In this document: piece after piece, positions 1 through 53,629 of the stretch
Layout: every line of letters begins with the position of its first letter
Position numbering within the stretch: the stretch's first letter is position 1
Assembly: GCF_006345805.1 (NCBI RefSeq)
Contig: NC_043024.1
Coordinates: 2,852,001-2,916,000, forward strand
Length of the DNA: 64,000 nt
Source of the DNA: Octopus sinensis
Taxonomy: Eukaryota
Direction of reading: 5' to 3'
Made by a program: the position numbers and the translations under genes
The notes under the pieces: model-generated
Database searches by the model: none
Told to the model about the DNA's origin: nothing
What the model saw: only the letters and a program-made list of their open reading frames with translations

Positions 1-202
1 GGTTAGCGGTAGGAGATAAGGGTTTCTGTTATCTTCAGAAATGTAAACAAAGCCACATCTGGTGCTTACGGTACCTATACCGAAGGATCACCATAAACTT
101 CCTCTTTCTGTTGGTATTTGATATTAAGATTTAGGGTATATCGAAAATTAGAGTGGAGCTTCAAAGGGAGAACGAAATGTTGAAAGTAATAAGACAACTA
201 CC

Positions 203-354
203 TATTTCTTTATTGCCAACAAGGGGCTAAACACAGAGGGGACAAACAAGGACAGACAAAGGAATTAAGTCGATTATATCGACTCCAGTGCGTAACTGGT
301 ACTTAATTTATCGACCCCGAAAGGATGAAAAGCAAAGTCGACCTCGGCGGAATT
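203..354 (-). mobile_element. 5'-truncated SINE, family A (tRNA-like head, Meta/MESC-like core, Tx1-like tail)
   Basis: Minus strand reads ccgccgaggtcgactttgcttttcatcctttcggggtcgataaattaagtaccagttacgc...gccccttgttggcaataaagaaata. Many copies, e.g. ~846-1045, 4800-5085, 12460-12650, 13138-13290, 13545-13720, 23714-23870, 32007-32160. The core-domain name is from memory and unverified. Confidence 0.75.
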
Positions 355-956
355 ATAGCTTCAGTAACGTTTATCATCAAAATAAGCTTCAAAATAAACA
401 TACGTACTTATGACATGTATACAATATAAATGCTTGTGTGTATATAATACTTACATATTAATATAGAGAGTCAACGGGGAAGATGTGACGGAACTGAAGT
501 CAGAGCGGACAATAACAGCTTCGAAAGAATTTCTAGGTTTTTACAACAAACGTTGGTTTATATTTTTTGAAATCTACATAATAAAAGAATGCTGTTTGTA
601 TACCTTTACACGGTTGATTATCAGTCCTATAAGTTCAATTGTGTCCGTTAAAAGGATGGGTAATTAAACAGGAGCAGGTGCGACCATTTTTAAAGGTCTT
701 AAACTATTAATTGCCAGGGGAAGTAACTCTTTTTCTTCGCTTTGCTTGCTTCTTCAACTCTTGTTGAGGCTGTTGCGAAAAAATCAGCATGTATTAGGCA
801 TTTTAAACCTCGCGGGGCCCATTCCTCTCCGAATAGAAAGCATCTATTTTTTTTTTATTGCCCACAAGGGGCTAAACACAGAGAGGACAAACAAGGACAG
901 ACAGACGGATTAAGTCGATTATATCGACGCCAGTGCGTAACTGCTACTTATTTAAT

Positions 957-1113
957 CGAAAGGATGAAAGGTAAAGTCGACCTCGGCGGAATTTGAACTC
1001 AGAACGTAGCATCAGACGAAATACTGCTGAGCATTTCACCCGGCAGTATTTCGTCTGATGCTACGTTCTGAGTTCAAATTCCGCCGAGGTCGACTTTACC
1101 TTTCATCCTTTCG
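957..1113. repeat. Perfect 71-bp inverted repeat with 15-nt loop (fold-back of a SINE-A 5' part)
   Basis: 957-1027 is the exact reverse complement of 1043-1113; loop tgagcatttcacccg. Confidence 0.95.
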
Positions 1114-1252
1114 GGGTCGAAAGCATCATCTAAGCTCTCAAGTCATACTCGCTTGTGAACATCTGTTAAGCTTACATACATGCACACGATTCTATTTTCC
1201 AACATCAGCCTTCATTTAAATAAGTCCTGGAGTACTTTATATAGTTTATTTG

Positions 1253-1681
1253 ATAATTCGGATCTTTTCGCTTTGACGGACAGATTTTTAAAATAATATC
1301 TTTGTAACTAAGCACTTTTAAACTTAGTATACTGGTAGAATGTGTTTATAAAACATCTTTTTCTCTTGGCTCTCATGAGAAAATTCTGTAGTTTGTAAGC
1401 TATTTCTTGTTAAATGTCTCGGATTTTAGCAATTTCAACCAATCAATGACGTCTATTGAGGTGAATCCAATTACTGCTGTTGTTTGTCAACAAGTTCAAC
1501 AACAACGTCCGGTGAGAAATTAAACAAGAAATAGCATACAAACTACAGAATTTTCTCAAGAAATCCAAGAGAAAAAGATGTTTTATAAACACATTCTACC
1601 AGTATACGAAGTTTAAAAGTGTTTAGTTGCAAAGAAATTATTTTTAAAATCTGCTGGTCAAAGTGAGAAGATCTGATAATT
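1253..1681. mobile_element. ~430-bp MITE-like element with long (~160 bp) imperfect TIRs
   Basis: Left end aattcggatcttttcgctttgac...cagatttttaaaataatatctttgtaactaagcac; right end gtgtttagttgcaaagaaattatttttaaaatctgctggtcaaagtgagaagatctgataatt. No coding capacity. Confidence 0.8.
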
Positions 1682-1749
1682 CTTCTTCATCCTCATTATT
1701 ATCATGTTGAGAAGACTCGTCAAGCAAAGTGAATTCGTAGTTGTGGTCG

Positions 1750-1960
1750 ATACTGGTGTCACGTAACTGGCACCCGTGCACGTGACATGCTAAAAGCATC
1801 CATTACACTCTTGGACTGGTTGGCGTTAGGAAGGACATCCAACCGTAGAAGCCGTGCCAAATCAGATTGGAACTTGGTGAAGCTCTCTGGCTTACCAGTT
1901 CCAGTCAAACCGTTTGACCTATGCCAGTAAGTAGGAATTGATAAGATGTACCCAGTGTTA
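1750..1960 (+). mobile_element. RTE-tail-like non-autonomous retroposon fragment
   Basis: Contains ggttggcgttaggaaggacatccaaccgtagaa, homologous to the insert at 43081-43836 and to the RTE 3' region. Repeated in each unit (~11545-11760, 19950-20150, 22105-22320, 30410-30630, 46970-47170, 49120-49335). Confidence 0.55.
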
Positions 1961-1963
1961 GGT

Positions 1964-2617
1964 ATGGACACATAAGAGGTGCAGCAACATCAAAGGAAAA
2001 TTAACTGAGAAGATAGCTTTCATGTGCGGCAAATGCACAGGGACAATAGACACCACAGATACTCAGAAAACAGATTCCATCACACTCCAGGGGGAGAAAC
2101 TAGAAATAGTTGATAGTTTCCGCTACCTGGGTGACCAAGTTAGTAGTGGGGGTGGATGCTCAGAGAGTGTCACCACTAGAATACGAATAGCTTGGGCTAA
2201 GTTTAGAAAGCTCCTACCCCTACTGGTGGCAAAGGGTCTCTCGCTCAGAGTGAAAGTTAGATTGTATGATGCATGCGTGTGTATAGCCATGCTTCACGGT
2301 AGTGAAAAATGGGTTGTGACTGCAGAGGACATACGTAGACTTGAAAGAAATGAAGCTAACATGATCCGCTGGATGTGTAATGTCAGTGTGCACACACGAC
2401 AGAGTGTAAGCGCCCTGAGTGAAATGCTGGACATAAGAAGCATCAGATGTGGTGTGCAAGAGAGACGTCTGCGCTGGAATGGTCATGTACTGTGGATGGA
2501 TGAAGTGAAATGTGTGAAGTGCCACTGTTGCAGCGTCCTGGCTACCCAGACCCCGGTCGAACCGTGCAACCCGTACTAGCGCGGAAAACGGACTTTAAAC
2601 GATAATGATGTTGATGA
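1964..2617 (+). mobile_element. RTE-clade LINE 3' fragment (RT C-terminal part)
   Basis: WTHKRC...CGKC, VDSFRYLGDQVSSGGG, RIRIAWAKFRKLLPLL, MLHGSEKW and RRLRWNGHV are RTE-type RT C-terminal motifs. Ends in a degenerate (gat)n tail that abuts the Helitron sequence. Confidence 0.85.
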
Positions 2618-3209
2618 ATTTTTTGTTGACATGTACGCCAAAATTGAATCAAAGATTCACCTATATAAGAACACACCAAAAACATCTCCAGGTTGCTTCA
2701 TGTATTCGCTTAGGGGACAGCATAAATAATGATGGGTATGGAAATAATCTGGGGCAATTGTGCATCCTTCCATTGAGCTTCATAAGTGGACCCCACCCCT
2801 ACTATATGCATGAAAGAACACAAGAAGCCGTGACATGTGTACAAAATTATGGTAGACCAGATATATTTATTATAACTTTTACATGTGACCCAAAATGGCC
2901 TGAAATACAAAAGAAACTCTTTCTTCATCAACAGGCACACCATAGACAAGATCTCATAGAATTGGTTTTTAACTTAAAATAAAATAATATGATGATGCAC
3001 CCCTTTTCTAAATCATATAGCCTCGGGTAAGTTCACTGTTTTATGAATATAGTGGAATGACAGAAAAGGGAATTACCTCATGCCTGTATTTTACTCTGGC
3101 TATGCACAAAAATAAACTCAACCAAATTATGTATATCATAATACTTAGAATGTAGCTCCTGAGAAACAGTGAAAGTAATTACTCGATCAACGATGGGTAT
3201 TGCTGCTAG
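2618..3209 (+). mobile_element. Helitron relic: Rep (HUH) fragment plus 3' terminus
   Basis: VDMYAKIES, GPHPYYMHERTQEAVTCVQNYGRPDIFIITFTCDPKWPEI and a degenerate E*QKRELPHACILLWL (cf. EWQKRGLPHAHIL). Subterminal hairpin at 3180-3199 and CTAG at 3206-3209. Confidence 0.85.
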
Positions 3210-3352
3210 TCTATATATATAAAAGAGAGATTCTGTCTGTCTGTTTGTTTGTCGAGCAAAATGGAAGTAAATTGTTCAAAGGAAGCTATTATGCTTTGTC
3301 TATATATATAAAATCGAAATTCCCTTTCTTTCTTTCACCGAATGAAAGTACT
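3210..3352 (+). mobile_element. Two tandem Helitron 5'-end-like segments
   Basis: TCTATATATATAAAAGAGAGATTCTGTCTGTCTG at 3210 and TCTATATATATAAAATCG at 3299. TC + (TA)n + A-run starts resemble animal Helitron 5' ends. Confidence 0.6.
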
Positions 3353-4162: not shown

Positions 4163-4799
4163 AGGGCGACGTTTTTTTTTAATTCTAGGTCATACGGGGT
4201 TGATTGCATATTCAGAATCTCCCATATGTAAATCGTAGGAATTCCAAAATTTGTTTTACTTAAAAATTGCCCGGGGAGGGGGGGGGCAAAGGAATTCATT
4301 GCATGCCCAGCCCCGGAAGTCACCGCACGCCACTGACATACTGTTTTTTCGCAACAGCCTCAACAAGAGTTGAAGAAGCAAAGCAAAGCGAAGAAAAAGA
4401 GTTACTTCCCCTGGCAATTAATTGTTTAAGACCTTTAAAAATGGTCGCACCTGCTCCTGTTTAATTACCCATCCTTTTAACGGACACAATTGAACTTATA
4501 GGACTGATAATCAACCGTGTAAACGTATACAAACAGCATTCTTTTATTATGTAGATTTCAAAAAATATAAACCAACGTTTGTTGTAAAAACCTAGAACTT
4601 CTTTCGAAGCTGTTATTGTCCGCTCTGACTTCAGTTCCGTCACATCTTCCCCGTTGACTCTCTATATTAATATGTAAGTATTATATACACACAAACATTT
4701 ATATTGTATACATGTCATAAGTACGTATGTTTATTTTGAAGCTCATTTTGATGATAAACGTTACTGAGGGTATAATTCTCTAAATCTTAATATCAAAAC

Positions 4800-7196: not shown

Positions 7197-8978
7197 ATGT
7201 ATTATACAGGAAAGAAATCATATCAATGTGATATCTGTGGTAAATCATTCTCTCAAACATCTAGTTTGACTAATCACAAACGTATTCATACGGGTGAGAA
7301 ACCATATCAGTGTGAAATCTGTGGTAAATCTTTCTCCCATAGCGGTAGCTTAACTAAACATAAACGTATTCATACAGGTGAGAAACCATATCAGTGTGAT
7401 ATCTGTGGTAAATCTATCTCTCGTAATAGTGATGTAACTAAACATAAACGTATTCATACAGGAGAGAAACCATATCAATGTGAAATCTGCGGCAAATCAT
7501 TTTCTCAGAATCAACACTTATCTAATCACAAATACATTCATACAGGTGAGAAACCATATCAGTGTGATATCTGTGGTAAATCATTCTCTCAAACTAGTGC
7601 TGTAACTAAACATAAACCTATTCATACAGGGGAGAAACCATATCAGTGTGATATCTGTGGTAAATCTTTCTCTCGTACTAGTGATGTAACTCAACATAAA
7701 CGTATTCATACAGGTGAGAAACCGTATAAGCGTGATATCTGTGGCCAATCGTTCTCTCGAAATCATCATTTAATGATTCACAAACATATTCATACAGGAG
7801 AAAAACCATATCACTGTGATATCTGTGGTAAATCATTCTCTCGAAATCACCACTTAACTACTCACAAATACATTCATACAGGAGAAACACCATATCAGTG
7901 TGATATTTGTGGTAAATCTTTCTCTCATACTAGTAATGTAACTAAACATAAACGTATTCATACAGGAGAAACACCATATCAGTGTGATATCTGTGGAGAA
8001 TCATTCTCTCGAAATCAACACTTAACTGCTCACAAATACATTCATACAGGAGAAACACCATATCAGTGTGATATTTGTGGTAAATCTTTCTCTCGTAATA
8101 GTGATGTAACCAGACATAAACGTATTCATACAGGTGAGAAACCATATCAGTGTGATATTTGTGGAGAATCATTCACTCAGAATCAACACCTAACGAGTCA
8201 CAATCGTATTCATACAGGGGAGAAACCATATCAGTGTGATATCTGTGGTAAATCTTTCTCTCGTAATGGTTCTGTAACTGAACATAAACGTATTCATACC
8301 GGTGAGAAACCATATCAGTGTGGTACCTGTGGCCAATCGTTCTCTCGAAATCATCATTTAATAACTCACAATCGTATTCATACACAAGAAAAACCATATC
8401 AGTGTGATATCTGTGGTAAATCTTTCTCTCACACTAGTGATGTAACTAAACATAAACGTATTCATACAGGTGAGAAACCATATCAGTGTGATATTTGTGG
8501 TAAATCTTTCTCTCATACTAGTGATGTAACTCAACATAAACGTATTCATACAGGGGAGAAACCATATCATTGTGATATCTGTGGTAAATCTTTCTCTCAG
8601 ACATCTAGTTTTACTAATCACAAACGTATTCATACAGGAGAAAAACCATATCAGTGTGATATTTCTGGTAAATCTTTCCCTCATACTAGTGATGTAACTA
8701 AACATAAACGTATTCATACAGGTGAGAAACCATATCAGTGTGATATTTGTGGTAAATCTTTCTCTCATACTAGTGAAGTAACACAACATAAACGTATTCA
8801 TACAGGGGAGAAACCATATCAGTGTGATATCTGTGGCAAATCATTCTCTCAAACATCTAGTTTGACTAATCACAAACGTATTCATACAGGAGAAAAACCA
8901 TATCAATGTGATATCTGTGGCAAATCATTCTCTCAAACATCTAGTTTGACTAATCACAAACGTATTCATACAGGATAG
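7197..8978 (+). CDS. Poly-C2H2 zinc-finger protein ZNF1 (21 repeats, 19 with intact CCHH), no effector domain
   Basis: 593 aa of 28-aa [28 protein letters not shown] repeats; repeat 7 has C>R and repeat 18 has C>S. The true start is uncertain. Confidence 0.85.
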
Positions 8979-9735: not shown

Positions 9736-10237
9736 GACATCAAAACTAAGGTGTAAAATGTTATCCTTGTACCATGACTTCTTCTTTTCGACCAAGTCTC
9801 TCAAAAATCATTATTTAACTGGACACAAATTTATACACACAGAAGAGGAACCTTTTATTATAAATGAAGTGTGTAATATTCTGTGTGAATTGCCACGATT
9901 GTTTGTCATCACCTTTCTAAGGGCCAAAATCTTAAATGGTAACCTCATCAACCTTTGTGAATATTTATAATGTGAAATCTAAATAAAGCTGTTTTACTCT
10001 TTAAGTATTCTTCTGTCATATTGTATGTCCAACATCTAAAACCAAGACTTGTATTGACCCAATCATAAACTAGACAATTCACAGACCCAATGAGTATGAG
10101 ATAAAAGGTTAACTCCACCATGCTTAGCTTTATAAGCTGTTCATTTCCATGTTCCAGCCCTTCTCAGCCCTCTTTTATCCATCCATCATAGCGTTATGGG
10201 CCATTGCAGGGGAGACAAATTAGGCAATAGCAGACAG

Positions 10238-10975
10238 GTACTTTCATTTTGCCGGTGAATGAAAGAAAGGGAATTTTGATTTTATATATATAGACAAAGC
10301 ATAATAGCTTCCTTTGAACAATTTACTTCCATTTTGCTGGACAAACAAACAAACAGACAGAATTTCTCTTTTATATACATAGACTAGCAGCAATACCCAT
10401 CGTTGATCGAGTAATTACTTTCACTGTTTCTCAGGAGCTACATTCTAAGTATTATGATATACATAATTTGGTTGAGTTTATTTTTGTGCATAGCCAGAGT
10501 AAAATACAGGCATAAGGTAATCCCCTTTTCTGTCATTCCACTGTATACATAAAACAGTGAACTTACCCGAGGATATATGATTTAGAAAAGAGGTGCATCA
10601 TCATATTATTTTATTTTAAGTGAAAAACCCATGCTATGAGATCTTGTCTATGGTGTGCCTGTTGATGAAGAAAGAGTTTCTTTTGTATTTCAGGCCATTT
10701 TGGGTCACATGTAAAAGTTATAATAAATATATCTGGTCTACCATAATTTCGTACATATGCCACGGCATCTTGTGTTCTTTCATGCATATAGTAGGGGTGG
10801 GGTCCACTTGTGAAGCTCAATGGAAGGATGCACAATTGCCCCAGATTATTTCCATACCCATCATTATTTATGCTGTCCCCTAAGCGAATATATGAAGCAA
10901 CCTGGAGCTGTTTTTGGTGTGTTCTTACATAGGTGAATCTTTGATTCAATTTTGCCGTACATGTCAACAAAAAAT
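10238..10975 (-). mobile_element. Helitron 5'-end segments + CTAG|TC junction + Rep relic
   Basis: Reverse complement of 2618-3352; junction gactag at 10382-10387. Confidence 0.8.
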
Positions 10976-11541
10976 TCATCAACATCATCATCGTTTAACG
11001 TCCGTTTTCCGCGCTAGTACGGGTTGGACGGTTCGACCGGGGTCTGGGAATCCAGGACGCTGCAACAGTGGCACTTCACACATTTCTCCTCATCCATCCA
11101 CAGTACATGACCATACCAGCGCAAACGTCGCTCTTGCACACCACATCTGATGCTTCTTATGTCCAGCATTTCTCTCAGGGCGCTTACACTCTGTCGTGCA
11201 TGCACACTGACATTACACGTCCAGTGGATCATGTTAGCTTCATTTCTTTCAAGTCTACCCATGTCCTCTGCAGTCACAGCCTATGTTTCACTACTGTGAA
11301 GCATTGCAATTCGTATTCTGGTGGTGACACTCTCTGAGATTTCAGCATCCACCCCAACTACTAACTTGGTCACCTAGGTAGCAGAGACTATCAACTACTT
11401 CTAGTTTCTCCCCCTGGAGTGTGATGGAATCTGTTTTCTGAATATCTCTGGTGTCTATTGTCCCTGTGCATTTGCTGCACCTGAAAGCTATCTTCTCAGT
11501 TAATTTTCCTTTGATGTTGCTGCACCTCTTATGTGTCCATA
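10976..11541 (-). mobile_element. RTE LINE 3' fragment
   Basis: Copy of 1964-2617 (RRLRWYGHV) with an internal deletion. Confidence 0.85.
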
Positions 11542-16194: not shown

Positions 16195-18312
16195 ATGTAT
16201 TATACAGGAAAGAAATCATATCAATGTGATATCTGTGGCAAATCATTCTCTCAAACATCTAGTTTGACTAATCACAAACATATTCATACAGGGGAGAAAC
16301 CATATCAGTGTGATATTTGTGGTAAATCTTTCTCTCATAATAGTAATGTAACTAAACATAAACGTATTCATACGGGGAAGAAACCATATCAGTGTGATGT
16401 CTGTGGTAAATCTTTCTCTCACACTCGTGATGTAACTAAACATAAACGTATTCATACAGGAGAGAAACCATATCAGTGTGGTACCTGTGGCCAATCATTC
16501 TCTCAAAATCATCATTTAATGAATCACAAACGTATTCATACAGGAGAAAAACCATATCAATGTGATATATGTGGCAAATCATTCTCTCGAACATCTAGTT
16601 TGACTGATCACAAACGTATTCATACAGGTGAGAAACCATATCAATGTGATATCTGTGGTAAATCATTCTCTCGTAATCAACACTTAACTACTCACAAATA
16701 CATTCATACAGGAGAGAAACCATATCAGTGTGATATTTGTGGTAAATCATTCTCTGGAAATCACCACTTAACTGCTCACAAATACATTCATACCGGAGAG
16801 AAACCATATCAGTGTGATGTCTGTGGTAAATCATTCTCTCATACTAGTAATGTAACTCAACATAAACGTATTCATACAGGTGAGAAACCATATCAGTGTG
16901 ATATCTGTGGAGAATCATTCACTCAGAATCAACACTTAACTACTCACAAATACATTCACACAGGAGAGAAACCATATCATTGTGATATCTGTGGTAAATC
17001 ATTCTCTGGAAATCACCACTTAACTGCTCACAAATACATTCATACAGGAGAGAAACCATATCAGTGTGATATCTGTGGTAAATCATTTTCTGGAAATCAC
17101 CACTTAACTGCTCACAAATACATTCATACAGGTGAGAAACCATATCAGTGTGATATCTGTGGTAAATCTTTCTTTCAAAGCGGTAATTTAATTAAACATA
17201 AACGTATTCATACAGGAGAAAAACCATATCAGTGTGATATTTGTGGTAAATCTTTCACTCACACTAGTGATGTAACTAAACATAAACGTATTCATACAGG
17301 TGAGAAACCATATCAGTGTGATATCTGTGGTAAATCTTTCTCTCATAGCTATAGCCTAACTACACATATACGTATTCATACAGGGGAGAAACCATATCAG
17401 TGTGATATTTGTGGTAAATCTTTCCCTCATACTAGTGATGTAACTAAACATAAACGTATTCATACAGGTGAGAAACCATATCAGTGTGATATTTGTGGTA
17501 AATCTTTCTCTCATACTAGTGATATAACTAAACATAAACGTATTCATACAGGTGAAAAACCATATAAGTGTGATATTTGTGGTAAATCTTTCCCTCATAG
17601 CGGTAACTTAAATAAACATAAACGTATTCATACAGGGGAGAAAATATATCACTGTGAAATCTGTGGTAAATCATTTCCTCAGAACCATCACTCATCTAAT
17701 CACAAACGTATTCATACAGGTGAGAAACCATATCAGTGTGATATCTGTGGTAAATCTTTCTCTCAAGATATTCATGTAACTAAACATAAACGTATTCATA
17801 CAGGTGAGAAACCATATCAGTGTGATATCTGTGGTAAATCTTTCTCTCATAATAGTGAAGTAACTAAACATAAACGTATTCATACAGGGGAGAAACCATA
17901 TCAGTGTGATATCTGTGGTAAATCTTTCTCTGAAGATATTCATGTAACTAAACATAAACGTATTCATACAGGGGAGAAACCATATCAGTGTGATATTTGT
18001 GGTAAATCTTTCTCTGATAATAGTGATGTAACTAAACATAAACGTAGTCATACAGGGGAGAAACCATACCAGTGTGATATTTGTGGTAAATCTTTCTCTC
18101 ATAGCGGTAGCTTAACTAAACATAACCGTATTCATACAGGGGAGAAACCATATCAGTGTGATATCTGTGGTAAATCATTCTCTGACACTAGTGCTGTAAC
18201 TAGACATAAACGTATTCATACAGGGGAGAAACCATATCAGTGTGATGTCTGTGGAGAATCATTCACTCAAAATCAAAACCTAACTAGTCACAACCGTATT
18301 CATACAGGATAG
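16195..18312 (+). CDS. Poly-C2H2 zinc-finger protein ZNF2 (25 fingers)
   Basis: 705 aa, all repeats with intact C-x2-C and H-x3-H; ends at the linker TAG. Confidence 0.88.
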
Positions 18313-20535: not shown

Positions 20536-20857
20536 ATCACAAACTAGACAATTCACAGACCCAATGAGTATGAGATAAAAGGTTAACTCCACCATGCTTA
20601 GCTTTATAAGCTGTTCATTTCCATGTTCCAGCCCTTCTCAGCCCTCTTTTATCCATCCATCATAGTGTTATGGGCTATTGCAGGGGAGACAAATTAGGCA
20701 ATAGCAGACAGGTACTTTCATTTTGCCGGTGAAAGAAAGAAAGGGAATTTTGATTTTATATATATAGACAAAGCATAATAGCTTCCTTTGAACAATTTAC
20801 TTCCATTTTGCTGGACAAACATACAGACAGACAGAATTTCTCTTTTATATATATAGA

Positions 20858-21445
20858 CTAGCAGCAATACCCATCGTTGATCGAGTAATTGCTTTCACTG
20901 TTTCTCAGGAGCTACATTCTAAGTATTATGATATACATAATTTGGTTGAGTTTATTTTTGTGCATATCCAGAGTAAAATACTGGCATGAGGTAATCCCCT
21001 TTTCTGTCATTCCACTATATTCATAAAACAGAGAACTTCCCCAAGGATATATGATTTAGAAAAGAGGTGCATCATCATATTATTTTATTTTAAGTTAAAA
21101 GCCCAGGCTATGAGATCTTGTCTATGGTGTGCCTGTTGATGAAGAAAGAGTTTCTTTTTTCAGGCCATTTTGGGTCACATGTAAAAGTTATAATAAATAT
21201 ATCTGGTCTACCATAATTTCGTACATATGTCACAACATCTTGTGTTCTTTCATGCAAATAGTAGGGGTGGGGTCCATATGTGAAGCTCAATGGAAGGATG
21301 CACAATTGCCCCAGATTATTTCCATACCCATCATTATTTATGCTGTCCCCTAAGCGAATATATGAAGCAACCTGGAGCTGTTTTTGGTGTGTTCTTACAT
21401 AGGTGAGTCTTTGATTCAATTTTGGCGTACATGTCAAAAAAAAAT
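20858..21445 (-). mobile_element. Helitron Rep relic with 3' CTAG
   Basis: YGRPDIFIITFTCDPKWPE; junction gactag at 20856-20861. Confidence 0.8.
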
Positions 21446-22100
21446 TCATCAATATCATCATCGTTTAACGTCCGTTTTCCGTGCTAGTACGGGTTGGACG
21501 TTTCGACCGGGGTCTGGGAAGCCAGGACGCTGCAACAGTGGCACTTCACACATTTCTCCTCATCCATCTGCAGTACATGACCATACCAGCGCAAACGTCG
21601 CTCTTGCACACCACATCTGATGCTTCTTATGTCCAGCATTTCTCTCAGGGCGCTTACACTCCGTCATATGTGCACACTGACATTACACATCCAGCGGATC
21701 ATGTTAGCTTCATTTCTTTCAAGTTTACACATGTCCTCTGCAGTCACAACCCACTTTTCACTACCGTGAAGCATGGCTATACACACGCATGCATCATACA
21801 ATCTAACTTTCACTCTTAGCAAGAGACCCATTTCCACCAGTAGGGGTAGGAGCTTTCTAAACTTTGCCCAGGCTATTCGTATTCTAGTGGTGACACTCTC
21901 TGAGCATCCACCCTCACTACTAACTTGGTTACCTAGGTAGCAGAGACTATCAACTACTTCTGGTTTCTCCCCCTGGAGTGTGATGGAATCTGTTTTCTGA
22001 GTATCTGTGGTGTCTATTGTCCCTGTGCATTTGCCGCACATGAAAGCTATCTTCTCAGTTAATTTTCCTTTGATGTTGCTTCACCTCTTATGTGTCCATA
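21446..22100 (-). mobile_element. RTE LINE 3' fragment
   Basis: ORF 21664-22041, RIRIAWAKFRKLLPLL. Confidence 0.85.
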
Positions 22101-26525: not shown

Positions 26526-28559
26526 ATGTATTATACAGGAAAGAAATCATATCAATGTGATATCTGTGGCAAATCATTCTCTCAAACATCTAGTTTGACT
26601 AATCACAAACGTATTCATACAGGGGAGAAACCATATCAGTGTGATATTTGTGGTAAATCTTTCTCTCATAATAGTAATGTAACTAAACATAAACGTATTC
26701 ATACGGAGGAGAAACCATATCAGTGTGATGTCTGTGGTAAATCTTTCTCTCACACTCGTGATGTAACTAAACATAAACGTATTCATACAGGAGAGAAACA
26801 ATATCAGTGTGGTACCTGTGGCCAATCATTCTCTCAAAATCATCATTTAATGAATCACAAACGTATTCATACAGGAGAAAAACCATATCAATGTGATATA
26901 TGTGGCAAATCATTCTCTCAAACATCTAGTTTGACTGATCACAAACGTATTCATACAGGTGAGAAACCATATCAATGTGATATCTGTGGTAAATCATTCT
27001 CTCGTAATCAACACTTAACTACTCACAAATACATTCATACAGGAGAGAAACCATATCAGTGTGATGTCTGTGGTAAATCTTTCTCTGGAAATCACCACTT
27101 AACTGCTCACAAATACATTCATACCGGAGAGAAACCATATCAGTGTGATGTCTGTGGTAAATCTTTCTCCAATACTAGTAATGTAACTCAACATAAACGT
27201 ATTCATACAGGTGAGAAACCATATCAGTGTGATATCTGTGGAGAATCATTCACTCAGAATCAACACTTAACTACTCACAAATACATTCACACAGGAGAGA
27301 AACCATATCATTGTGATATCTGTGGTAAATCATTCTCTAGAAATCACCACTTAACTGCTCACAAATACATTCATACAGGAGAGAAACCATATCAGTGTGA
27401 TATCTGTGGTAAATCATTTTCTGGAAATCACCACTTAACTGTTCACAAATACATTCATACAGGTGAGAAACCATATCAGTGTGATATCTGTGGTAAATCT
27501 TTCTTTCAAAGCGGTAATTTAATTAAACATAAACGTATTCATACAGGAGAAAAACCATATCAGTGTGATATTTGTGGTAAATCTTTCACTCACACTAGTG
27601 ATGTAACTAAACATAAACGTATTCATACAGGTGAGAAACCATATCAGTGTGATATCTGTGGTAAATCTTTCTCTCATAGCTGTAGCTTAACTACACATAT
27701 ACGTATTCATACAGGGGAGAAACCATATCAGTGTGATATTTGTGGTAAATCTTTCCCTCATACTAGTGATGTAACTAAACATAAACGTATTCATACAGGT
27801 GAGAAACCATATCAGTGTGATATTTGTGGTAAATCTTTCTCTCATACTAGTGATATAACTAAACATAAACGTATTCATACCGGTGAAAAACCATATAAGT
27901 GTGATATTTGTGGTAAATCTTTCCCTGATAGCGGTAACTTAAATAAACATAAACGTATTCATACAGGGGAGAAAATATATCACTGTGAAATCTGTGGTAA
28001 ATCATTTCCTCAGAACCATCACTCATCTAATCACAAACGTATTCATACAGGTGAGAAACCATATCAGTGTGATATTTGTGGTAAATCTTTCTCTCATAAT
28101 AGTGAAGTAACTAAACATAAACGTATTCATACAGGGGAGAAACCATATCAGTGTGATATCTGTGGTAAATCTTTCTCTGAAGATATTCATGTAACTAAAC
28201 ATAAACGTATTCATACAGGGGAGAAACCATATCAGTGTGATATTTGTGGTAAATCTTTCTCTGATAATAGTGATGTAACTAAACATAAACGTAGTCATAC
28301 AGGGGAGAAACCATACCAGTGTGATATTTGTGGTAAATCTTTCTCTCATAGCGGTAGCTTAACTAAACATAACCGTATTCATACAGGAGAGAAACCATAT
28401 CAGTGTGATATCTGTGGTAAATCATTCTCTGACACTAGTGCTGTAACTAGACATAAACGTATTCATACAGGGGAGAAACCATATCAGTGTGATGTCTGTG
28501 GAGAATCATTCACTCAGAATCAAAACCTAACTAGGCACAACCGTATTCATACAGGATAG
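26526..28559 (+). CDS. Poly-C2H2 zinc-finger protein ZNF3 (24 fingers), close paralogue of ZNF2
   Basis: 677 aa; colinear with ZNF2 but lacks finger 19 (QDIHVTK), exactly 28 aa. Confidence 0.88.
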
Positions 28560-29548
28560 AAACCATATCACTGTGATATCTGCGGCAGATCATTTCCTCA
28601 GAATCATCACTTATCTAATCACAAATGCGTCCATATGGAGGAAAAGTAAAGTCAACGTGATATCTGCGGAGAATCATTCTCTCAAAGTGCGGAGTCTATT
28701 TCCCATAAATGCATCCATCCAGCATCGAAACTACATCACTATATTATCTCTAGTAAATCATTCTCCCAAATCATCTTCTGTCTTATGATAATAAGTTTAT
28801 TGTATACTGTGCTCATTGGAAAAAGTTAAATGAAGAAATAGAAAGAAGACATATAGTTGTGAAATAAAGACAGCAGGGAAAGCTTAAAGTAGATGCACTG
28901 TACACAATAAAACACAAAATGTCCCCAGAAATGTATGCTGGGATAGAACCACAAAGAGGAAAGAGACCATAGGCACATCAGGGGTTGTGATGACGTATTT
29001 GGGGAAACCTGAAAGTTTTGATGGTTGCAGTCAACGTATAGTTTATTCCCCGCTTCACTAATTGTGCATATGAAAGATTATCTCTGAGAGCCATGGGTGC
29101 TGCACTGTTTTTTTTTTTTTTTTTATTTTATAAGCATGTCCATGGCTAGTTGAGGTATGGACTTCAAAAAAGTGACCAAAGTTGCTGGAAAGATGGGAGA
29201 TAGTCATGCAAACTTCAATCAAATCAGACATTTGACATCAAAACTAAGGTGTAAAATGTTATCCTTGTACCATGACTTCTTCTTTTCGACCAAGTCTCTC
29301 AAAAATCATTATTTAACTGGACACAAATGTATACACACAGAAGAGGAACCTTTGTTATAAATGAAGTGTGTAATATTCTGTGTGAATTGCCACAATTGTT
29401 TGTCATCACCTTTGTAAGGGCCAAAATCTTGAATGGTAACCTCATCAACCTTTGTGAATATTTATAATGTGAAATCTAAATAAAGCTGTTTTACTCTTTA
29501 AGTATTCTTCTGTCATTTTGTATGTCCAACATCTGAAACCAAGACTTG

Positions 29549-30406
29549 TGTTCTTTCATGCATATAGTGGGGGTGGGGTTCACTTATGAAACTCAATGGA
29601 AGGATGCACAATTGCCCCAGATTATTTCCATACCCATCATTATTTATGCTGTCCCCTAAGCGAATATATGAAGCAACCTGGAGCTGTTTTTGGTGTGTTC
29701 TTACATAGGTGAGTCTTTGATTCAATCTTGGCGTACATGTCAACAAAAAATTCATCAACATCATCGTCGTTTAACGTCCGTTTTCCGTGCTAGTACGGGT
29801 TGGACGTTTCGACTGGGGTCTGGGAAGCCAGGACGCTGCAACAGTGGCACTTCACACATTTCTCCTCATCCATCCACAGTACATAACCATACCAGCGCAA
29901 ACGTCGCTCTTGCACACCACATCTGATGCTTCTTATGTCCAGCATTTCTCTCAGGGCACTTACACTCCGTCATATGTGCACACTGACATTACACATCCAG
30001 CGGATCATGTTAGCTTCATTTCTTTCAAGTTTACACATGTCCTCTGCAGTCACAGCCCATGTTTCACTACCGTGAAGCATGGCTATACACACGCATGCAT
30101 CATACAATCTAACTTTCACTCTTAGCAAGAGACCCATTTCCACCAGTAGGGGTAGGAGCTTTCTAAACTTTGCCCAGGCTATTCGTATTCTAGTGGTGAC
30201 ACTCTCTGAGCATCCACCCTCACTACTAACTTGGTTACCTAGGTAGCAGAGACTATCAACTACTTCTGGTTTCTCCCCCTGGAGTGCGATGGAATCTGTT
30301 TTCTGAGTATCTGTGGTGTCTATTGTCCCTGTGCATTTGCCGCACATGAAAGCTATCTTCTCAGTTAATTTTCCTTTGATGTTGCTTCACCTCTTATGTG
30401 TCCATA
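29549..30406 (-). mobile_element. Helitron remnant (3' end deleted) + RTE 3' fragment
   Basis: ORFs 29513-29764 and 29970-30347; deletion junction ccaagacttgt|gttctttc at ~29548. Confidence 0.8.
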
Positions 30407-30687
30407 GCTTACACTGGGTACATCTTATCAATTCCTACTTGCTGGCATAGGTCAAACGGTTTGACTGAAACTGGTAAGCCAGAGAGCTTCACCAAGTTCC
30501 AATCTGATTTGGCACGGCTTCTACGGTTGGATGTCCTTCCTAACACCAACCAGTCCAAGAGTGTAATGGATGTTTTTAGCGTGTCACCTGCACGGGTGCC
30601 AGTTGCGTGACACCAGCATCGACCACAACTACGAATTCACTTTGCTTGACGAGTCTTCTCAACATGATAATAATGAGGATGAAGAAG

Positions 30688-31116
30688 AATTATCAGATCT
30701 TCTCACTTTGACCGGCAGATTTTTAAAATAATTTCTTTGTAACTAAACACTTTTAAACTTCGTATACTGGTAGAATGTGTTTATAAAACATCTTTTTCTC
30801 TTGGATTTCTTGAGAAAATTCTGTAGTTCGTATGCTATTTCTTGTTTAATTTCTCACCGGACGTTGTTGTTGAACTTGTTGACAAACAACAGCAGTAATT
30901 GTATTCATCTCAATATACGTCATTGATTGGTTGAAATTGCCAAAATCCGAGAAATTTAACAAGAAATAGGTTTAAAACTTCAGAATTTTCTCAAGAAAGC
31001 CAAGAGAAAAAGATGTTTTATAAACACATTCTACCAGTATACTAAGTTTAAAAGTGTTTAGTTATAAAGAAATTATTTTAAAAATCTGTCGGTCAAAGCG
31101 AAAAGATCCGAATTAT
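30688..31116. mobile_element. ~430-bp long-TIR MITE
   Basis: Copy of 1253-1681. Confidence 0.8.
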
Positions 31117-31248
31117 CAAATAAACTATATAAAGTACCCCAGGACTTATTTAAATGAAGGCTGATGCTGGAAAATAGAATCGTGTGCATGTACGTAAGCT
31201 TAACAGACATTCACAAGCGAGTATGACTTGAGAGCTTACATGATGCTT

Positions 31249-31419
31249 TCGACCCCGAAAGGATGAAAGGTAAAGTCGACCTCGGCGGATTTGAACTCAG
31301 AACGTAGCATCAGACGAAATACTGCCGGGCGAAATGCTCAGCAGTATTTCGTCTGATGCTACGTTCTGAGTTCAAATTCTGCCGACGTCGACTTTACCTT
31401 TCATCCTTTCGGGGGTCGA
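31249..31419. repeat. Fold-back SINE-A hairpin
   Basis: As 12384-12555. Confidence 0.92.
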
Positions 31420-32560: not shown

Positions 32561-33336
<776 letters not shown>

Positions 33337-35772: not shown

Positions 35773-35781
35773 AGGTAAGTA

Positions 35782-43080: not shown

Positions 43081-44700
<1,620 letters not shown>

Positions 44701-45509: not shown

Positions 45510-47555
45510 GACCCAATCATAAACTAGACAATTCACAGACCCAATGAGTATGAGATAAAAGGTTAACTCCACCATGCTTAGCTTTATAAGCTGTTCATTT
45601 CCATGTTCCAGCCCTTCTCAGCCCTCTTTTATCCATCCATCATAGCGTTATGGGCCATTGCAGGGGAGACAAATTAGGCAATAGCAGACAGGTACTTTCA
45701 ATTTGCCGGTGAATGAAAGAAAGGGAATTTTGATTTTATATATATAGACAAAGCATAATAGCTTCCTTTGAACAATTTACTTCCATTTTGCTCGACAAAC
45801 AAACAAACAGACAGAATCTCTCTTTTATATATATAGACTAGCAGCAATACCCATCGTTGATCGAGTAATTACTTTCACTGCTTCTCAGGAGCTACATTCT
45901 AAGTATTATGATATACATAATTTGGTTGAGTTTATTTTTGTGCATATCCAGAGTAAAATACGGGCATGAGGTAATTCCCTTTTCTGTCATTCCACTGTAT
46001 ACGTAAAACAGTGAACTTCCCCAAGGATATATGATTTAGAAAAGAGGTGCATCATCATATTATTTTATTTTAAGTTAAAAACCCATGCTATGAGATCTTG
46101 TCTATGGTGTGCCTGTTGATGAAGAAAGAGTTTCTTTTGTATTTCAGGCCATTTTGGGTCACATGTAAAAGTTATAATAAATATATCTGGTCTACCATAA
46201 TTTCGTACATATGTCACAACATCTTGTGTTCTGTCATGCATATAGTAGGGGTGGGGTCCACTTATGAAGCTCAATGGAAGGATGCACAATTGCCCCAGAT
46301 TATTTCCATTTATGCTGTCCCCTAAGCGAATATTTGAAGCAACCTGGAGCTGTTTTTGGTTTGTTCTTACATAGGTGAGTCTTTGATTCAATCTTGGCGT
46401 ACATGTCAACAAAAAATTCATCAACATCATCATCGTTTAACGTCCGTTTTCTGTGCTAGCATGGGTAGGATGGTTCCACCGGGGTCTGGGAAGCCAGGAC
46501 GCTGCAACAGTGCCTCTTCACACATTTCTCCTCATCCATCCAGAGTACATGACCATACCAGTGCAAATGTCGCTCTTGCACATCACATCTGATGCTTCCT
46601 ATGTCCAGCATTTCTCTCAGGGCGCTTACACTCTGTCATGTGTGCACACTGACATTACACATCCAGCGGATCATGTTAGCTTCATTTCTTTCAAGTCTAC
46701 GCATGTCCTCTGCAGTCACAGCCCATGTTTCACTACCGTGAAGCATGGCAATTCGCACACATGCATCATACAATCTAACTTTCACTCTGAGCGAGAGACC
46801 CTTTGCCACCAGTAGGGGTAGGAGCTTTCTAAACTTTGCCCAGGCTATTCGTATTCTAGTGGTGACTCTCTCTAAGCATCCACCCTCACTACTAACGTGG
46901 TCACCTAGGTAGCAGAAACTATCAACTACTTCTACTTTCTCCCCCTGGAGTGTGATGGAATCTGTTATCAATTCCTACTTGCTGGCGTAGGTCAAACGGT
47001 TTGACTGGAACTGGTAAGCCAGAGAGCTTCACCAAGTTCCAATCTGATTTGGCACGGCTTCTACGGTTGGATGTCCTTCCTAACGCCAACCAGTCCAAGA
47101 GTGTAATGGATGCTTTTAGCGTGTCACCTGCACGGGTGCCAGTTACGTGACACCAGCATCGACCACAACTACGAATTCACTTTGATTGACGAGACTTCTC
47201 AACATGATAATAATGAGGATGAAGTAGAATTATCAGATCTTCTCACTTTGACCGGCAGATTTTTAAAATAATTTCTTTGTAACTAAACACTTTTAAACTT
47301 CGTATACTTGTAGAATGTGTTTATAAAACATCTTTTTCTCTTGGATTTCTTGAGAAAATTCTGTAGTTTGTATGCTATTTCTTGCTTAATTTCTCACCGG
47401 ACGTTGTTGTTTAACTTGTTGACAAACAACAGCAGTAATTGTATTCACCTCAATAGACGTCTTTGATTGGTTGAAATTGCCAAATAGCTTACAAACTACA
47501 GAATTTTCTCAAGAAAGCTGAGAGAAAAAGATGTTTTATAAACACATTCTACCAA
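45510..47555 (-). repeat. First of two tandem Helitron/RTE/MITE blocks in unit 4
   Basis: Junction gactag at 45836-45841; Helitron ORF 46065-46433; RTE ORF 46636-46971; truncated MITE 47228-47553. Confidence 0.8.
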
Positions 47556-47876
47556 TCACAAACTAGACAATTCACAGACCCAATGAGTATGAGATAAAAG
47601 GTTAACTCCACCATGCTTAGCTTTATAAGCTGTTCATTTCCATGTTCCAGCCCTTCTCAGCCCTCTTTTATCCATCCATCATAGTGTTATGGGCTATTGC
47701 AGGGGAGACAAATTAGGCAATAGCAGACAGGTACTTTCATTTTGCCGGTGAAAGAAAGAAAGGGAATTTCGATTTTATATATATAGACAAAGCATAATAG
47801 CTTCCTTTGAACAATTTACTTCCATTTTGCTGGACAAACAAACAGACAGACAGAATTTCTCTTTTATATATATAGA

Positions 47877-49118
47877 CTAGCAGCAATACCCATCGTTGAT
47901 CGAGTAATTACTTTCACTGTTTCTCAGGAGCTACATTCTAAGTATTATAATATACATAATTTGGTTGAGTTTATTTTTGTGCATATCCAGAGTAAAATAC
48001 TGGCATGAGGTAATCCCCTTTTCTGTCATTCCACTATATACATAAAACAGTGAACTTCCCCGAGGATATATGATTTAGAAAAGGGGTGCATCATCATATT
48101 ATTTTATTTTAAGTTAAAAACCCATGCTATGAGATCTTGTCTATGGTGTGCCTGTTGATGAAGAAAGAGTTTCTTTTTTCAGGCCATTTTGGGTCACATG
48201 TAAAAGTTATAATAAATATATCTGGTCTACCATAATTTCGTACATATGTCACAACATCTTGTGTTCTTTCATGCAAATATTAGGGGTGGGGTCCATATGT
48301 GAAGCTCAATGGAAGGATGCACAATTGCCCCAGATTATTTCCATACCCATCATTATTTATGCTGTCCCCTAAGCGAATACATGAAGCAACCTGGAGATGT
48401 TTTTGGTGTGTTCTTACATAGGTGAGTCTTTGATTCAATTTTGGCGTACATGTCAACAAAAAATTCATCAACATCATCATCGTTTAACGTCCGTTTTCCA
48501 TGCTAGTACGGGTTGGACGGTTCGGCCGGGGTGTGGGAAGCCAGGACGCTGCAACAGTGGCACTTCACACATTTCTCCTCATCCATCTGCAGTACATGAC
48601 CATACCAGCGCAAACGTCGCTCTTGCACACCACATCTGATGCTTCTTATGTCCAGCATTTCTCTCAGGGCGCTTACACTCCGTCATATGTGCACACTGAC
48701 ATTACACATCCAGCGGATCATGTTAGCTTCATTTCTTTCAAGTTTACACATGTCCTCTGCAGTCACAGCCCATGTTTCACTACCGTGAAGCATGGCTATA
48801 CACACGCATGCATCATACAATCTAACTTTCACTCTTAGCAAGAGACCCATTTCCACCAGTAGGGGTAGGAGCTTTCTAAACTTTGCCCAGGCTATTCGTA
48901 TTCTAGTGGTGACACTCTCTGAGCATCCACCCTCACTACTAACTTGGTTACCTAGGTAGCAGAGACTATCAACTACTTCTGGTTTCTCCCCTGGAGTGTG
49001 ATGGAATCTGTTTTCTGAGTATCTGTGGTGTCTATTGTCCCTGTGCATTTGCCGCACATGAAAGCTATCTTCTCAGTTAATTTTCCTTTGATGTTGCTTC
49101 ACCTCTTATGTGTCCATA
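47877..49118 (-). mobile_element. Helitron Rep relic (47877-48464) + RTE fragment (48465-49118)
   Basis: Junction gactag at 47875-47880; ORFs 48280-48480 and 48683-49057. Confidence 0.8.

Positions 49119-51273: not shown

Positions 51274-53629
<2,356 letters not shown>

What the first reader, a model, noticed from the sequence alone, without database searches (positions are those of the whole stretch)
3180..3352. Helitron head-to-tail CTAG|TC junction in the ZNF repeat unit: possible rolling-circle amplification of a zinc-finger gene
Seen: the Helitron Rep relic ends with a 20-nt hairpin (tactc-g-atc-aac-gat-gggta, 3180-3199) 10 nt before the end of CTAG (3206-3209). It is followed immediately by TCTATATATATAAAA (3210), with a second such start at 3299. 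The same junction (gactag on +) is at 10382, 20856, 45836 and 47875, and is deleted in unit 3. Established: Helitrons start with TC, end with hairpin+CTRR, capture host genes and form head-to-tail tandems. Inference: cutting the array at this junction gives, on the minus strand, units that begin with a Helitron 5' end, contain a whole antisense ZNF gene and promoter, and end with a Helitron 3' end. That is the structure expected if the ZNF gene were Helitron cargo amplified by rolling-circle replication, which would be a new mechanism for the cephalopod C2H2 expansion. Against: the visible breakpoints (4330, 20536, 47556) are not at Helitron ends, so unequal crossover or microhomology events also operate.
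Basis: partly seen in the sequence, partly recalled or inferred. Interest (0 to 1): 0.8.

Follow-up and report, generated by a model that had tools for sequence, protein, structure and literature searches.

The report
Old Helitron tail-to-head joint, a passenger
The CTAG|TC site is very probably a real joint between the tail of one decayed Helitron transposon and the head of the next, but such joints are common, and nothing in this window shows that it, rather than ordinary segmental duplication, copied the neighbouring zinc-finger genes.

Summary
CTAG|TC is at 3206-3211 and in four more copies (10387, 20861, 45841 and 47880, minus strand), and it is deleted in unit 3. The five copies are about 95% identical parts of one duplicated block, so they count as one ancestral site.

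The window alone gave weak support. CTAGTC occurs 24 times against about 26 expected, and the proposed hairpin is not stable as DNA (z = +0.34). Outside comparison changed this:
- A full-length pseudoscorpion Helitron from the same Rep clade, and 47 metagenome contigs, carry the same joint: GC hairpin, GGGTA-N5-GCTAG, then TCTATATATATAAAA and (TGTYTG)n.
- The window's tail ranks first of 304 CTAG sites.
- The window's heads are the best hits of a head profile (E = 5e-8).

So this is very probably a real Helitron tail-to-head joint. It lies next to a dead Rep relic (2608-3138) whose stop codons are shared by all copies.

The rolling-circle reading for the zinc-finger unit is not supported:
- No mapped duplication or deletion breakpoint lies at the joint.
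- An inverted copy of the same age reads 142 bp through it.
- A 2-kb tandem duplication of the same age, and a younger 15-20-kb one, have other ends, with microhomology (CCA, ACAAG) and a templated insertion.
- In the metagenome contigs examined, such joints link 0.2-0.3-kb elements.

The reading is not excluded, because the array ends lie outside the window.

The parts
2608..3138 (+). Helitron Rep relic, copy 1. It covers the Helitron_like_N domain through the HUH motif (QKRELPHACILLWL), with in-frame stops at 2980, 3028 and 3058; homology ends at the stop at 3139.
   Evidence: Pfam PF14214, E = 4e-19, profile positions 38-153 of 191. tblastn of 150 RepHel proteins reaches 3138. The stops at 2980, 3058, 3139 and 3160 are shared by all five copies.
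3139..3209 (+). Helitron tail (3' end). It holds a decayed hairpin CTCGATCAACGATGGG (3182-3197), then TA, N5 and GCTAG, ending at 3209.
   Evidence: 15 of 23 positions upstream of GCTAG match the tail in L006 (CCCGGGCAACGCCGGGTAGGCCTGCTAG), ranking first of 304 CTAG sites. The GGGTA-N5-GCTAG spacing is the same as in the pseudoscorpion Helitron. The hairpin is not stable as DNA.
3210..3298 (+). Helitron head 1 (5' end): TCTATATATATAAAAGAGAGATTCTGTCTGTCTGTTTGTTTGTC...
   Evidence: The 15-mer is identical to the 5' ends at L004:3930, L002:9556 and L004:9556. It differs by 3 edits from the Helraiser LTS 22-mer in two copies (20857, 47876; copy 1 only at 5 edits or fewer to HelibatN), while reversed and rotated controls give 0 hits. 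Head profile E = 1.7e-7.
3299..3351 (+). Helitron head 2 (TCTATATATATAAAATCGAAATTCC...). In copy 1 it is cut at 3351/3352 by the end of the inverted duplication.
   Evidence: Head profile E = 0.016.
10295..11099 (-). Copy 2: Rep relic 11099-10455, tail 10454-10384, head 1 10383-10295. Head 2 starts at 10294.
20769..21512 (-). Copy 3: Rep relic 21512-20929, tail 20928-20858, head 1 20857-20769. Head 2 starts at 20768.
45749..46544 (-). Copy 4: Rep relic 46544-45909, tail 45908-45838, head 1 45837-45749. Head 2 starts at 45748.
47788..48549 (-). Copy 5: Rep relic 48549-47948, tail 47947-47877, head 1 47876-47788. Head 2 starts at 47787.
29545..29824 (-). Unit 3: only the N-terminal part of the Rep relic. 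The joint was removed by a 716-bp deletion with ACAAG microhomology.
16195..18312 (+). Context: one of the C2H2 zinc-finger ORFs. The others are at 7197-8978, 26526-28559, 41812-43218 and 43488-44402. All are antisense to the Helitron relic, which lies downstream of them; the joint is about 1.1 kb beyond the end of the zinc-finger repeat array in unit 1 (about 1.4 kb beyond the ORF stop) and farther in other units.

Best explanation
The site is a genuine but old tail-to-head joint between decayed Helitron copies.

Copy A is an internally deleted derivative of an autonomous element. It keeps about 178 codons of Rep (2608-3138) and a 71-bp tail that ends in GCTAG. Directly after it come one or two head-only stubs, starting at 3210 and 3299.

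Such joints arise in normal Helitron life, in one of two ways. Two rounds of rolling-circle copying can fail to separate. Or a second element can insert into the A|T formed by the host A and the first T of a resident element's TC (inferred).

This composite relic already lay downstream of a C2H2 zinc-finger gene, on the opposite strand and a little over 1 kb from it, and was already dead when the locus began to multiply. The whole segment of about 10 kb, relic included, was then copied by ordinary segmental duplication: unequal crossing-over and microhomology- or template-switch-mediated events. The joint is a passenger in each copy, not the engine.

Shown: the joint, its match to real Helitron ends, the death of Rep before the duplications, and the non-Helitron breakpoints. 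Inferred: the order of events and the way the joint first formed.
For: Rep relic.

Ends match independent Helitrons:
- Two pseudoscorpion copies, 99.4% identical with different flanks, show A|TCTCTATATATATAAAAATG...GGGTACATCCGCTAG|T.
- A third head in L004 follows a host A.
- 47 metagenome contigs carry GCTAG|TCTATATATATAAAA, with GC hairpins upstream and (TGTYTG)n downstream.
- The tail ranks first of 304 CTAG sites, and the head profile gives E = 5e-8.
- A TA-rich LTS (TATATAAA), TC/CTAG ends and an RTS hairpin are described as canonical (PMC12001565; PMC4778049).

Passenger status:
- Four in-frame stops are shared by all five copies.
- No breakpoint lies at the joint.
- The inverted copy reads through the joint.
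- The 2-kb tandem duplication junction has CCA microhomology, the unit-3 deletion has ACAAG, and 19321 carries a templated insertion.
- Duplications are nested, from 2 kb to 15-20 kb, at 94-98% identity.
- Helitron fragments are frequent in octopus genomes: 43,735 copies (0.7%) in O. bimaculoides and 3.7% in O. minor (PMC6279123). One lying in a 10-kb unit is therefore unremarkable.
- In the four contigs examined, the joint links diverged elements of 188-331 bp.
Against: - Apart from one 98% pair, the junction-block copies are nearly equidistant (about 95%). A single concatemer event would also give that pattern.
- No separate 5' end for copy A was established. The candidate at 569 is not significant.
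- The array's outer ends, and copies elsewhere in the genome, were not available.
- The tail match rests on a few reference families. A tail profile dominated by one family finds nothing.
- Beyond the first 15 nt, the head similarity is low-complexity and is shared with SINE microsatellites.
Confidence: 0.7

Rival explanations
1. Each unit of about 10.5 kb is one Helitron running head, antisense zinc-finger gene with promoter, Rep relic, tail. The array began as a rolling-circle concatemer mobilised in trans, and later rearrangements blurred it.
For: The joint is genuine and precise. Every intact unit has one. Four lineages of the junction block are nearly equidistant. No nearer 5' end for the Rep-bearing element could be proven. 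Tandem Helitron arrays and precise circle junctions are documented (PMC5876387; PMC4778049).
Against: - No mapped breakpoint lies at the joint.
- The left edge of the direct array (4336) is 2.3 kb inside the unit.
- Copy 1 is inverted and reads 142 bp past CTAG.
- A 2-kb tandem duplication and the inverted copy have the same age as the units but non-Helitron ends.
- Only one joint-to-joint interval is present in the window.
- A second head lies 89 bp after the first.
- Reported Helitron tandem monomers are 121-1,996 nt (PMC12001565), and the dimers seen here are 188-331 bp.
- Rep carried four stops before amplification.
Confidence: 0.08
2. The joint and the sequence within about 330 bp of it form a fragile spot, through Helitron ends, a (TA)n run or nicking by an active RepHel in trans. 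This spot seeded several of the local rearrangements without clean rolling-circle copying of the unit.
For: Four separate events have a breakpoint 142-331 bp on the head side of the joint: the end of the inverted copy (3351), the boundary of the 2-kb duplication (10058/9), and two deletions that end at 10052/3.
Against: No breakpoint is at the nick site itself. The events show microhomology and templated insertion, which are typical of replication errors anywhere. The count is small and the events may share ancestry. No active RepHel was seen in the window.
Confidence: 0.12
3. Chance. The CTAG, the weak palindrome and a TA-rich low-complexity run merely mimic Helitron ends next to an unrelated truncated Rep fragment.
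For: - CTAGTC is at its expected frequency and the hairpin is not stable.
- An unrelated 3-mismatch match to the Helraiser LTS lies inside a LINE ORF1 (34648/54936).
- SINE microsatellites score as high as the joint in free alignment with the pseudoscorpion LTS.
- A tail profile finds nothing.
Against: - The exact 15-mer head occurs only at the joints, and only at true 5' ends in the reference loci.
- The tail ranks first of 304 CTAG sites.
- The head profile gives E = 5e-8.
- The site is on the same strand as the only Rep relic of the unit and 68 nt downstream of it.
- The identical 20-mer joint, with hairpin and (TGTYTG)n context, occurs in 47 unrelated contigs.
Confidence: 0.07

Closest known systems
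Canonical (Helitron1-type) Helitron termini, as in Helibat/Helraiser and Heli1Xen1
   Same: 5' TC, a TA-rich head (TATATAAA), 3' CTAG, and a palindrome ending 10-12 nt before the end. A Rep with the HUH motif lies upstream on the same strand (PMC4778049; PMC12001565).
   Different: The palindrome has decayed to five transitions or transversions away from CCCGGGCAACGCCGGG and is no longer stable. The helicase and most of Rep are missing. No host A|T flanks are visible, because tail and head abut.
Precise head-to-tail Helitron junctions: circle intermediates, tandem dimers and tandem arrays
   Same: CTAG is joined directly to TC with no intervening base, as in Helraiser circles and in the tandem arrays reported in bats and plants (PMC4778049, PMC5876387). 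The identical 20-mer joint occurs in 47 metagenome contigs.
   Different: Known and observed monomers are short: 121-1,996 nt in Xenopus and 188-331 nt in the contigs. The proposed 10.5-kb monomer carrying a gene would be far outside that range and is not demonstrated.
The full-length Helitron of Cordylochernes scorpioides (L002 9555-15993 and L004 9555-15441)
   Same: Its Rep is about 50% identical to the relic. Its head is TCTCTATATATATAAAAATGAATG(TTTGTATG)n...GTTTGTTTGTC. Its tail is ...CCCGGGCGAAGCCGGGTACATCCGCTAG|T.
   Different: It is intact in Rep and helicase regions, is flanked by host A and T, and has a stable GC hairpin.
Tandem segmental duplication of C2H2 zinc-finger clusters
   Same: Repeated units of about 10 kb, each with one zinc-finger gene, showing nested duplications, deletions, an inverted copy and microhomology at junctions. 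Octopus genomes hold about 1,800-2,300 C2H2 genes (PMC6279123).
   Different: Nothing unusual. The unit happens to carry a Helitron relic, LINE and SINE pieces, and in some units a full-length LINE.
Helitron gene capture (maize, bats, Xenopus)
   Different: Documented captures are mostly gene fragments or promoters inside dispersed, terminus-bounded copies. No such dispersed copy or outer terminus was seen here.

Membership tests
Canonical Helitron (termini) | 5' end begins with TC followed by a TA-rich head | tested here: met
   TCTATATATATAAAA at 3210 and 3299. It is identical to the 5' ends at L002:9556, L004:9556 and L004:3930 and to 47 metagenome heads. Head profile E = 5e-8.
Canonical Helitron (termini) | 3' end is CTRR | tested here: met
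   GCTAG at 3205-3209. The GGGTA-N5-GCTAG spacing matches the pseudoscorpion element, L006 and L017.
Canonical Helitron (termini) | A 16-20-nt palindrome able to form a hairpin 10-12 nt upstream of the 3' end | tested here: inconclusive
   The position is right, and 13 of 18 positions match the hairpin plus TA of L006 and L027. As DNA the fold is -1.6 kcal/mol, z = +0.34. This is a decayed remnant, not a working hairpin.
Canonical Helitron (termini) | Insertion between host A and T without target-site duplication, ideally with an empty site | not testable with these tools
   Tail and head abut each other. The outer ends of both elements were not identified, and no orthologous or paralogous empty site was available.
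Autonomous Helitron | Rep (HUH, two Tyr) plus SF1 helicase in one ORF | tested here: not met
   Only Helitron_like_N through the HUH motif is present, with stops. tblastn with full-length RepHel proteins found no helicase homology anywhere in the window.
Helitron tandem array with the 10.5-kb zinc-finger unit as monomer | Array ends coincide with A|TC and CTAG|T | tested here: not met
   The left edge of the direct array is at 4336 (unit position 12704). The adjacent inverted copy ends at 3351, 142 bp past CTAG. The right end is outside the window.
Helitron tandem array with the 10.5-kb zinc-finger unit as monomer | All monomers are direct, of one length, and delimited only by tail|head joints | tested here: not met
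   One copy is inverted. The joint spacings are 10,474 bp and 2,039 bp, and one joint is deleted. The 2,039-bp spacing comes from a tandem duplication with CCA microhomology, not from Helitron ends.
Helitron tandem array with the 10.5-kb zinc-finger unit as monomer | Dispersed copies of the monomer bounded by the same termini | not testable with these tools
   No cephalopod genome collection was searchable. The octopus-specific head 28-mer had no match in the metagenome contigs.
Segmental duplication by unequal crossing-over or microhomology-mediated repair | Breakpoints at arbitrary positions with short microhomology or templated insertions, in nested blocks of differing size and age | tested here: met
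   CCA at 47552-4 and 20533-5. ACAAG at the unit-3 deletion and a templated insertion at 19321. Blocks range from 2 kb to 15-20 kb at 94-98% identity.

The most novel reading that the evidence does not exclude
The roughly 10.5-kb unit (head, antisense C2H2 zinc-finger gene with its promoter, Rep relic, tail) was at least once copied as a Helitron, by rolling-circle concatenation or trans-mobilisation. This seeded the array, which ordinary duplication then expanded. Helitrons would then have contributed to the cephalopod C2H2 expansion.
Probability: 0.07. Interest if true: 0.8.

Novelty: new member of a known kind. Interest (0 to 1): 0.25.

Why it matters
If Helitrons had amplified whole zinc-finger genes, that would give a new mechanism for one of the largest gene-family expansions in animals. 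The evidence here points the other way. The joint is a typical relic of Helitron dimer formation that was carried along when the locus duplicated by ordinary means.

The useful outcomes are modest. The window yields a well-defined head and tail for an octopus Helitron family. It also shows that precise tail|head dimers with this exact 20-mer are widespread in other organisms. And it gives a concrete, cheap genome-wide test that would settle the rolling-circle idea.

Tried and rejected
1. Coding continuity of Rep through the joint. One tblastn alignment (P0071, copy 5) ran through CTAG in frame. Searched alone, however, the segments after the HUH motif score 17 bits or less forward against 16.5 bits reverse, and three different frames each gave a plausible-looking motif. 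Rejected as not demonstrable.

2. A 5' end for the Rep-bearing element at 569 (GAAA|TCTACATAATAAAAGAATGCTGTTTGTA; equivalents at 4559, 12924, 23501, 31792 and 50504 on the minus strand). It appears only at 5 or more edits, where controls give 0-8 hits. It was not found with a 24-mer of the pseudoscorpion head, and no N-terminal RepHel homology lies between 569 and 2545. Kept only as a lead.

3. The head as a truncated SINE tail. Similarity to the SINE microsatellite region is real but weaker (score 34-40 against 58) and is confined to low-complexity sequence.

4. A tail for a short element that starts at 3299 and ends at the CTAG|T near 10073. It matches reference tails at 9 of 23 positions, which is average.

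5. Independent similarity of the 50 nt before head 2 to the tail. Not significant, P = 0.16.

6. Protein word-index searches. The Rep piece found one distant protein. The zinc-finger ORF was swamped by generic C2H2 proteins.

7. The cuttlefish (L003) and frog (L005) Helitron loci showed no recognisable ends. The Nucella proteins were not on record.

8. The literature holds no report linking Helitrons to octopus C2H2 expansion. Searches for terminal sequences in full text were unproductive.

9. A sub-threshold Pfam hit of ORF 2022-2579 to Pertussis_S2S3 (E = 0.046, 14.1 bits against a cut-off of 27) was treated as chance and not pursued.

Full report
WHAT IS THERE. The window is eukaryotic, cephalopod-type sequence. 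It holds C2H2 zinc-finger ORFs on the plus strand (7197-8978, 16195-18312, 26526-28559, 41812-43218, 43488-44402), octopus-type SINE-like repeats, a full-length LINE and long TA-rich satellites. The finding's coordinates are exact: tactcgatcaacgatgggta at 3180-3199, ttgctg, CTAG at 3206-3209, then TCTATATATATAAAA at 3210 and again at 3299. The same sequence lies on the minus strand at 10387, 20861, 45841 and 47880.

THE FIVE COPIES ARE ONE OBSERVATION. Self-comparison shows that all five lie inside one duplicated block. Copy 1 (3-3351) is inverted relative to the others. Pairwise identity of about 1.05 kb around the joint is 94.5-95.8%, and 98% for copies 3 and 5. In unit 3 the joint is removed by a 716-bp deletion with ACAAG microhomology.

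THE REP RELIC. The ORF at 2605-2979 matches Pfam Helitron_like_N (E = 4e-19, profile positions 38-153 of 191). A full HMMER search found 3,130 relatives, the best at 56% identity. Named members come from spiders, a pseudoscorpion, a gastropod, a frog and a cuttlefish. tblastn carries the homology in one frame, through three stops, to ...QKRELPHACILLWLCTKINSTKLCIS at 3138. That point is about 27 residues after the HUH motif, and full-length relatives continue for 600-900 more residues. No helicase homology exists anywhere in the window. In-frame stops at 2980, 3058, 3139 and 3160 are shared by all five copies, so Rep was dead before the block was duplicated. Beyond 3138 no coding homology can be shown.

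IS THE JOINT MORE THAN CHANCE? The window alone says no. CTAGTC occurs 24 times against about 26 expected. The upstream fold is ordinary. As DNA the proposed hairpin is no better than shuffles (-1.6 kcal/mol, z = +0.34).

Real Helitron ends say yes.
1. The Helraiser LTS (supplement of PMC4778049) begins TCCTATATAATAAAAGAGAAAC. Two of the joint copies (20857, 47876) match it with 3 edits, a third (10383) with 4, while reversed controls and rotations that do not overlap the real match give no hits. One unrelated 3-mismatch hit inside a LINE ORF1 (34648/54936) shows that chance hits do occur.
2. I fetched two copies of a full-length pseudoscorpion Helitron whose Rep belongs to the relic's clade. 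They are 99.4% identical over 5.4 kb and have different flanks. Their ends are host A|TCTCTATATATATAAAAATGAATGTTTGTATG...GTTTGTTTGTC and ...CCCGGGCGAAGCCGGGTACATCCGCTAG|T. A third head in L004 reads A|TCTATATATATAAAAATG. The window has TCTATATATATAAAAGAGAAATTCTGTCTGTCTGTTTGTTTGTCC after the joint and GGGTATTGCTGCTAG before it, with the same GGGTA-N5-GCTAG spacing.
3. A metagenome scan for the 20-mer GCTAG|TCTATATATATAAAA returned 47 contigs from several data sets and families. Upstream they carry GC hairpins, for example CCCGGGCAACGCCGGG-TA-N5/6-GCTAG in L006 and L027. Downstream they carry (TGTYTG)n runs, for example TCTATATATATAAAACAGAGAGGTGTGTCTGTCTGTTTGTTTGTTTGTTTGTCTCC in L019.
4. Quantitatively, the exact head 15-mer occurs in the window only at the joints. 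A head profile gives E = 5e-8 to 1e-4 there, with SINE microsatellites next at about 1e-3. The 23 nt upstream of GCTAG match a reference tail at 15 of 23 positions, against 13 or less for all 299 other CTAG sites.

Two cautions apply. Beyond the first 15 nt the head similarity is low-complexity. And a tail profile dominated by one family finds nothing.

I conclude that this is very probably a genuine Helitron tail|head joint. Its hairpin is the decayed remnant of the family hairpin: CTCGATCAACGATGGG against CCCGGGCAACGCCGGG.

WHAT SUCH JOINTS USUALLY ARE. In the four metagenome contigs that show both elements and were examined, the joint links two diverged copies (roughly 70-92% identical over the aligned parts) of short non-autonomous Helitrons of 188-331 bp. 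In two of the four the first element follows a host A; in the other two it follows another CTAG or CTAG+TA. Where the second element's end is within the contig, it ends CTAG|T. Tandem Helitron arrays and precise circle junctions are documented (PMC4778049; PMC5876387), with monomers of 121-1,996 nt in Xenopus (PMC12001565). A precise joint can also arise by canonical insertion into the A|T formed by the host A and the T of a resident TC; this is my inference. In the window a second head follows the first after 89 bp, and an approximately 87-bp periodic structure surrounds the joint. This points to short units rather than a 10-kb one.

DID IT AMPLIFY THE ZINC-FINGER UNIT? The joint's presence in each unit is uninformative, because any internal point of a duplicated block recurs. 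The informative features are the breakpoints, and none lies at the joint:
- 3351/3352: the end of the inverted copy, 142 bp past CTAG.
- 4336: the left edge of the direct array, 2.3 kb inside the unit.
- 10058/9 (also 20533-5 and 47552-4): the boundary of a 2-kb tandem duplication, with CCA microhomology.
- 10052/3 with 10768/9: the unit-3 deletion, with ACAAG microhomology.
- 19321: a deletion with a templated insertion.
- 46965/6.
- A younger duplication of 15-20 kb (29545-43898 against 48258-64000, 97%).

The inverted copy and the 2-kb duplication are as diverged (about 95%) as the unit copies. Duplication that a head-to-tail concatemer cannot explain was therefore active in the same burst. 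Only one joint-to-joint interval (10,474 bp) exists in the window. Helitron fragments are common in octopus genomes: 0.7% with 43,735 copies in O. bimaculoides, and 3.7% in O. minor (PMC6279123). A relic inside a 10-kb unit is therefore expected fairly often.

WHAT REMAINS OPEN. Four lineages of the junction block are almost equidistant, which one concatemer event would also give. I could not prove a nearer 5' end for the Rep-bearing element. The array's outer ends and any dispersed copies were out of reach, because no cephalopod genome was searchable. I therefore leave the rolling-circle reading at about 7-8%. A weaker alternative, that the region near the joint is a fragile spot, rests on four events with breakpoints 142-331 bp on the head side. 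I give it about 12%.

VERDICT. The feature is a new member of a known kind, and interest is low to moderate.

Noticed in passing
window 54513-59462 (and 34219-39174): A full-length non-LTR retrotransposon. ORF1 (515 aa, with a CCHC knuckle) and ORF2 (1,130 aa, endonuclease plus RT by my reading of motifs) are intact in the right-hand copy. In the left-hand copy ORF2 is split into 35782-37770 and 37807-39174. It sits inside the 15-20-kb duplicated block (97% identity), so it inserted before that duplication.
   Followed up: partly
window 34648-34669 and 54936-54957: TCCTATGTAATAAAAGAGAAGA matches the Helraiser LTS 22-mer with three mismatches but lies inside the LINE ORF1 coding sequence. It is a useful reminder that chance look-alikes of Helitron heads occur.
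   Followed up: yes
window 569 (+); 4559, 12924, 23501, 31792, 50504 (-): GAAA|TCTACATAATAAAAGAATGCTGTTTGTATAC is a head-like sequence preceded by A. It is on the strand of the Rep relic and 2.0 kb upstream of it, and it shares CTGTTTGTA with the metagenome heads. If real, it would bound a 2.64-kb Helitron (569-3209) that excludes the zinc-finger gene. It is not statistically significant.
   Followed up: partly
window 2546-2579 (+) and equivalents (48506, 46459 on the minus strand): CCCCGGTCGAACCGTGCAACCCGTACTAG is a tail-like sequence, with 13 of 23 positions matching the pseudoscorpion tail (second rank, tied with an unrelated LINE site). It ends about 30 nt before the Rep homology starts. 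It overlaps the stop of ORF 2022-2579, which looks like a retrotransposon RT C-terminal region from its motifs (untested; it is unrelated to the window's LINE).
   Followed up: no
window 3351, 10052-10059, 19321, 20533, 29545, 47552: Several independent rearrangement breakpoints cluster 142-331 bp on the head side of the joint. Two deletions share the same distal end (10052/3). The one at 19321 carries a templated insertion (TAGATGTTGGACAGGTTTT) copied from nearby sequence.
   Followed up: partly
window 350-792 and 4336-4778; 1258-1673: A 443-bp inverted repeat (97.7% identity) flanks the spacer between the inverted copy and the first direct unit. The segment 1258-1673 is about 81% self-complementary, a fold-back or inverted TE pair present in every unit.
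   Followed up: no
window 32560-33340 and 51275-53630: TA-rich satellite blocks, with GC down to 9%. They are internally repetitive on both strands and lie at the start of the LINE-bearing part of the large duplicated block.
   Followed up: no
L006-L052 (metagenome contigs), e.g. L048, L034, L008, L014: One organism in sample Ga0194133 carries dozens of precise GGCTAG|TCTATATATATAAAA joints between short (188-331 bp) non-autonomous Helitrons that are roughly 70-92% identical over their aligned parts. This suggests either frequent dimer formation or a preference for inserting at the A|TC boundary of resident copies.
   Followed up: partly
L002 10055-11190 and L004 10055-10638: The pseudoscorpion Helitron carries a 69-bp tandem repeat array about 0.5 kb from its 5' end, with different copy numbers in the two copies.
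   Followed up: no
window 804-851 (-): A 14-16-residue match (RCFLFGEEWAPRGL) to the motif just before HUH in many RepHel proteins, on the opposite strand. E = 0.007-0.08 in a 2.6-kb search. It is probably chance, or possibly a second tiny Rep fragment.
   Followed up: no
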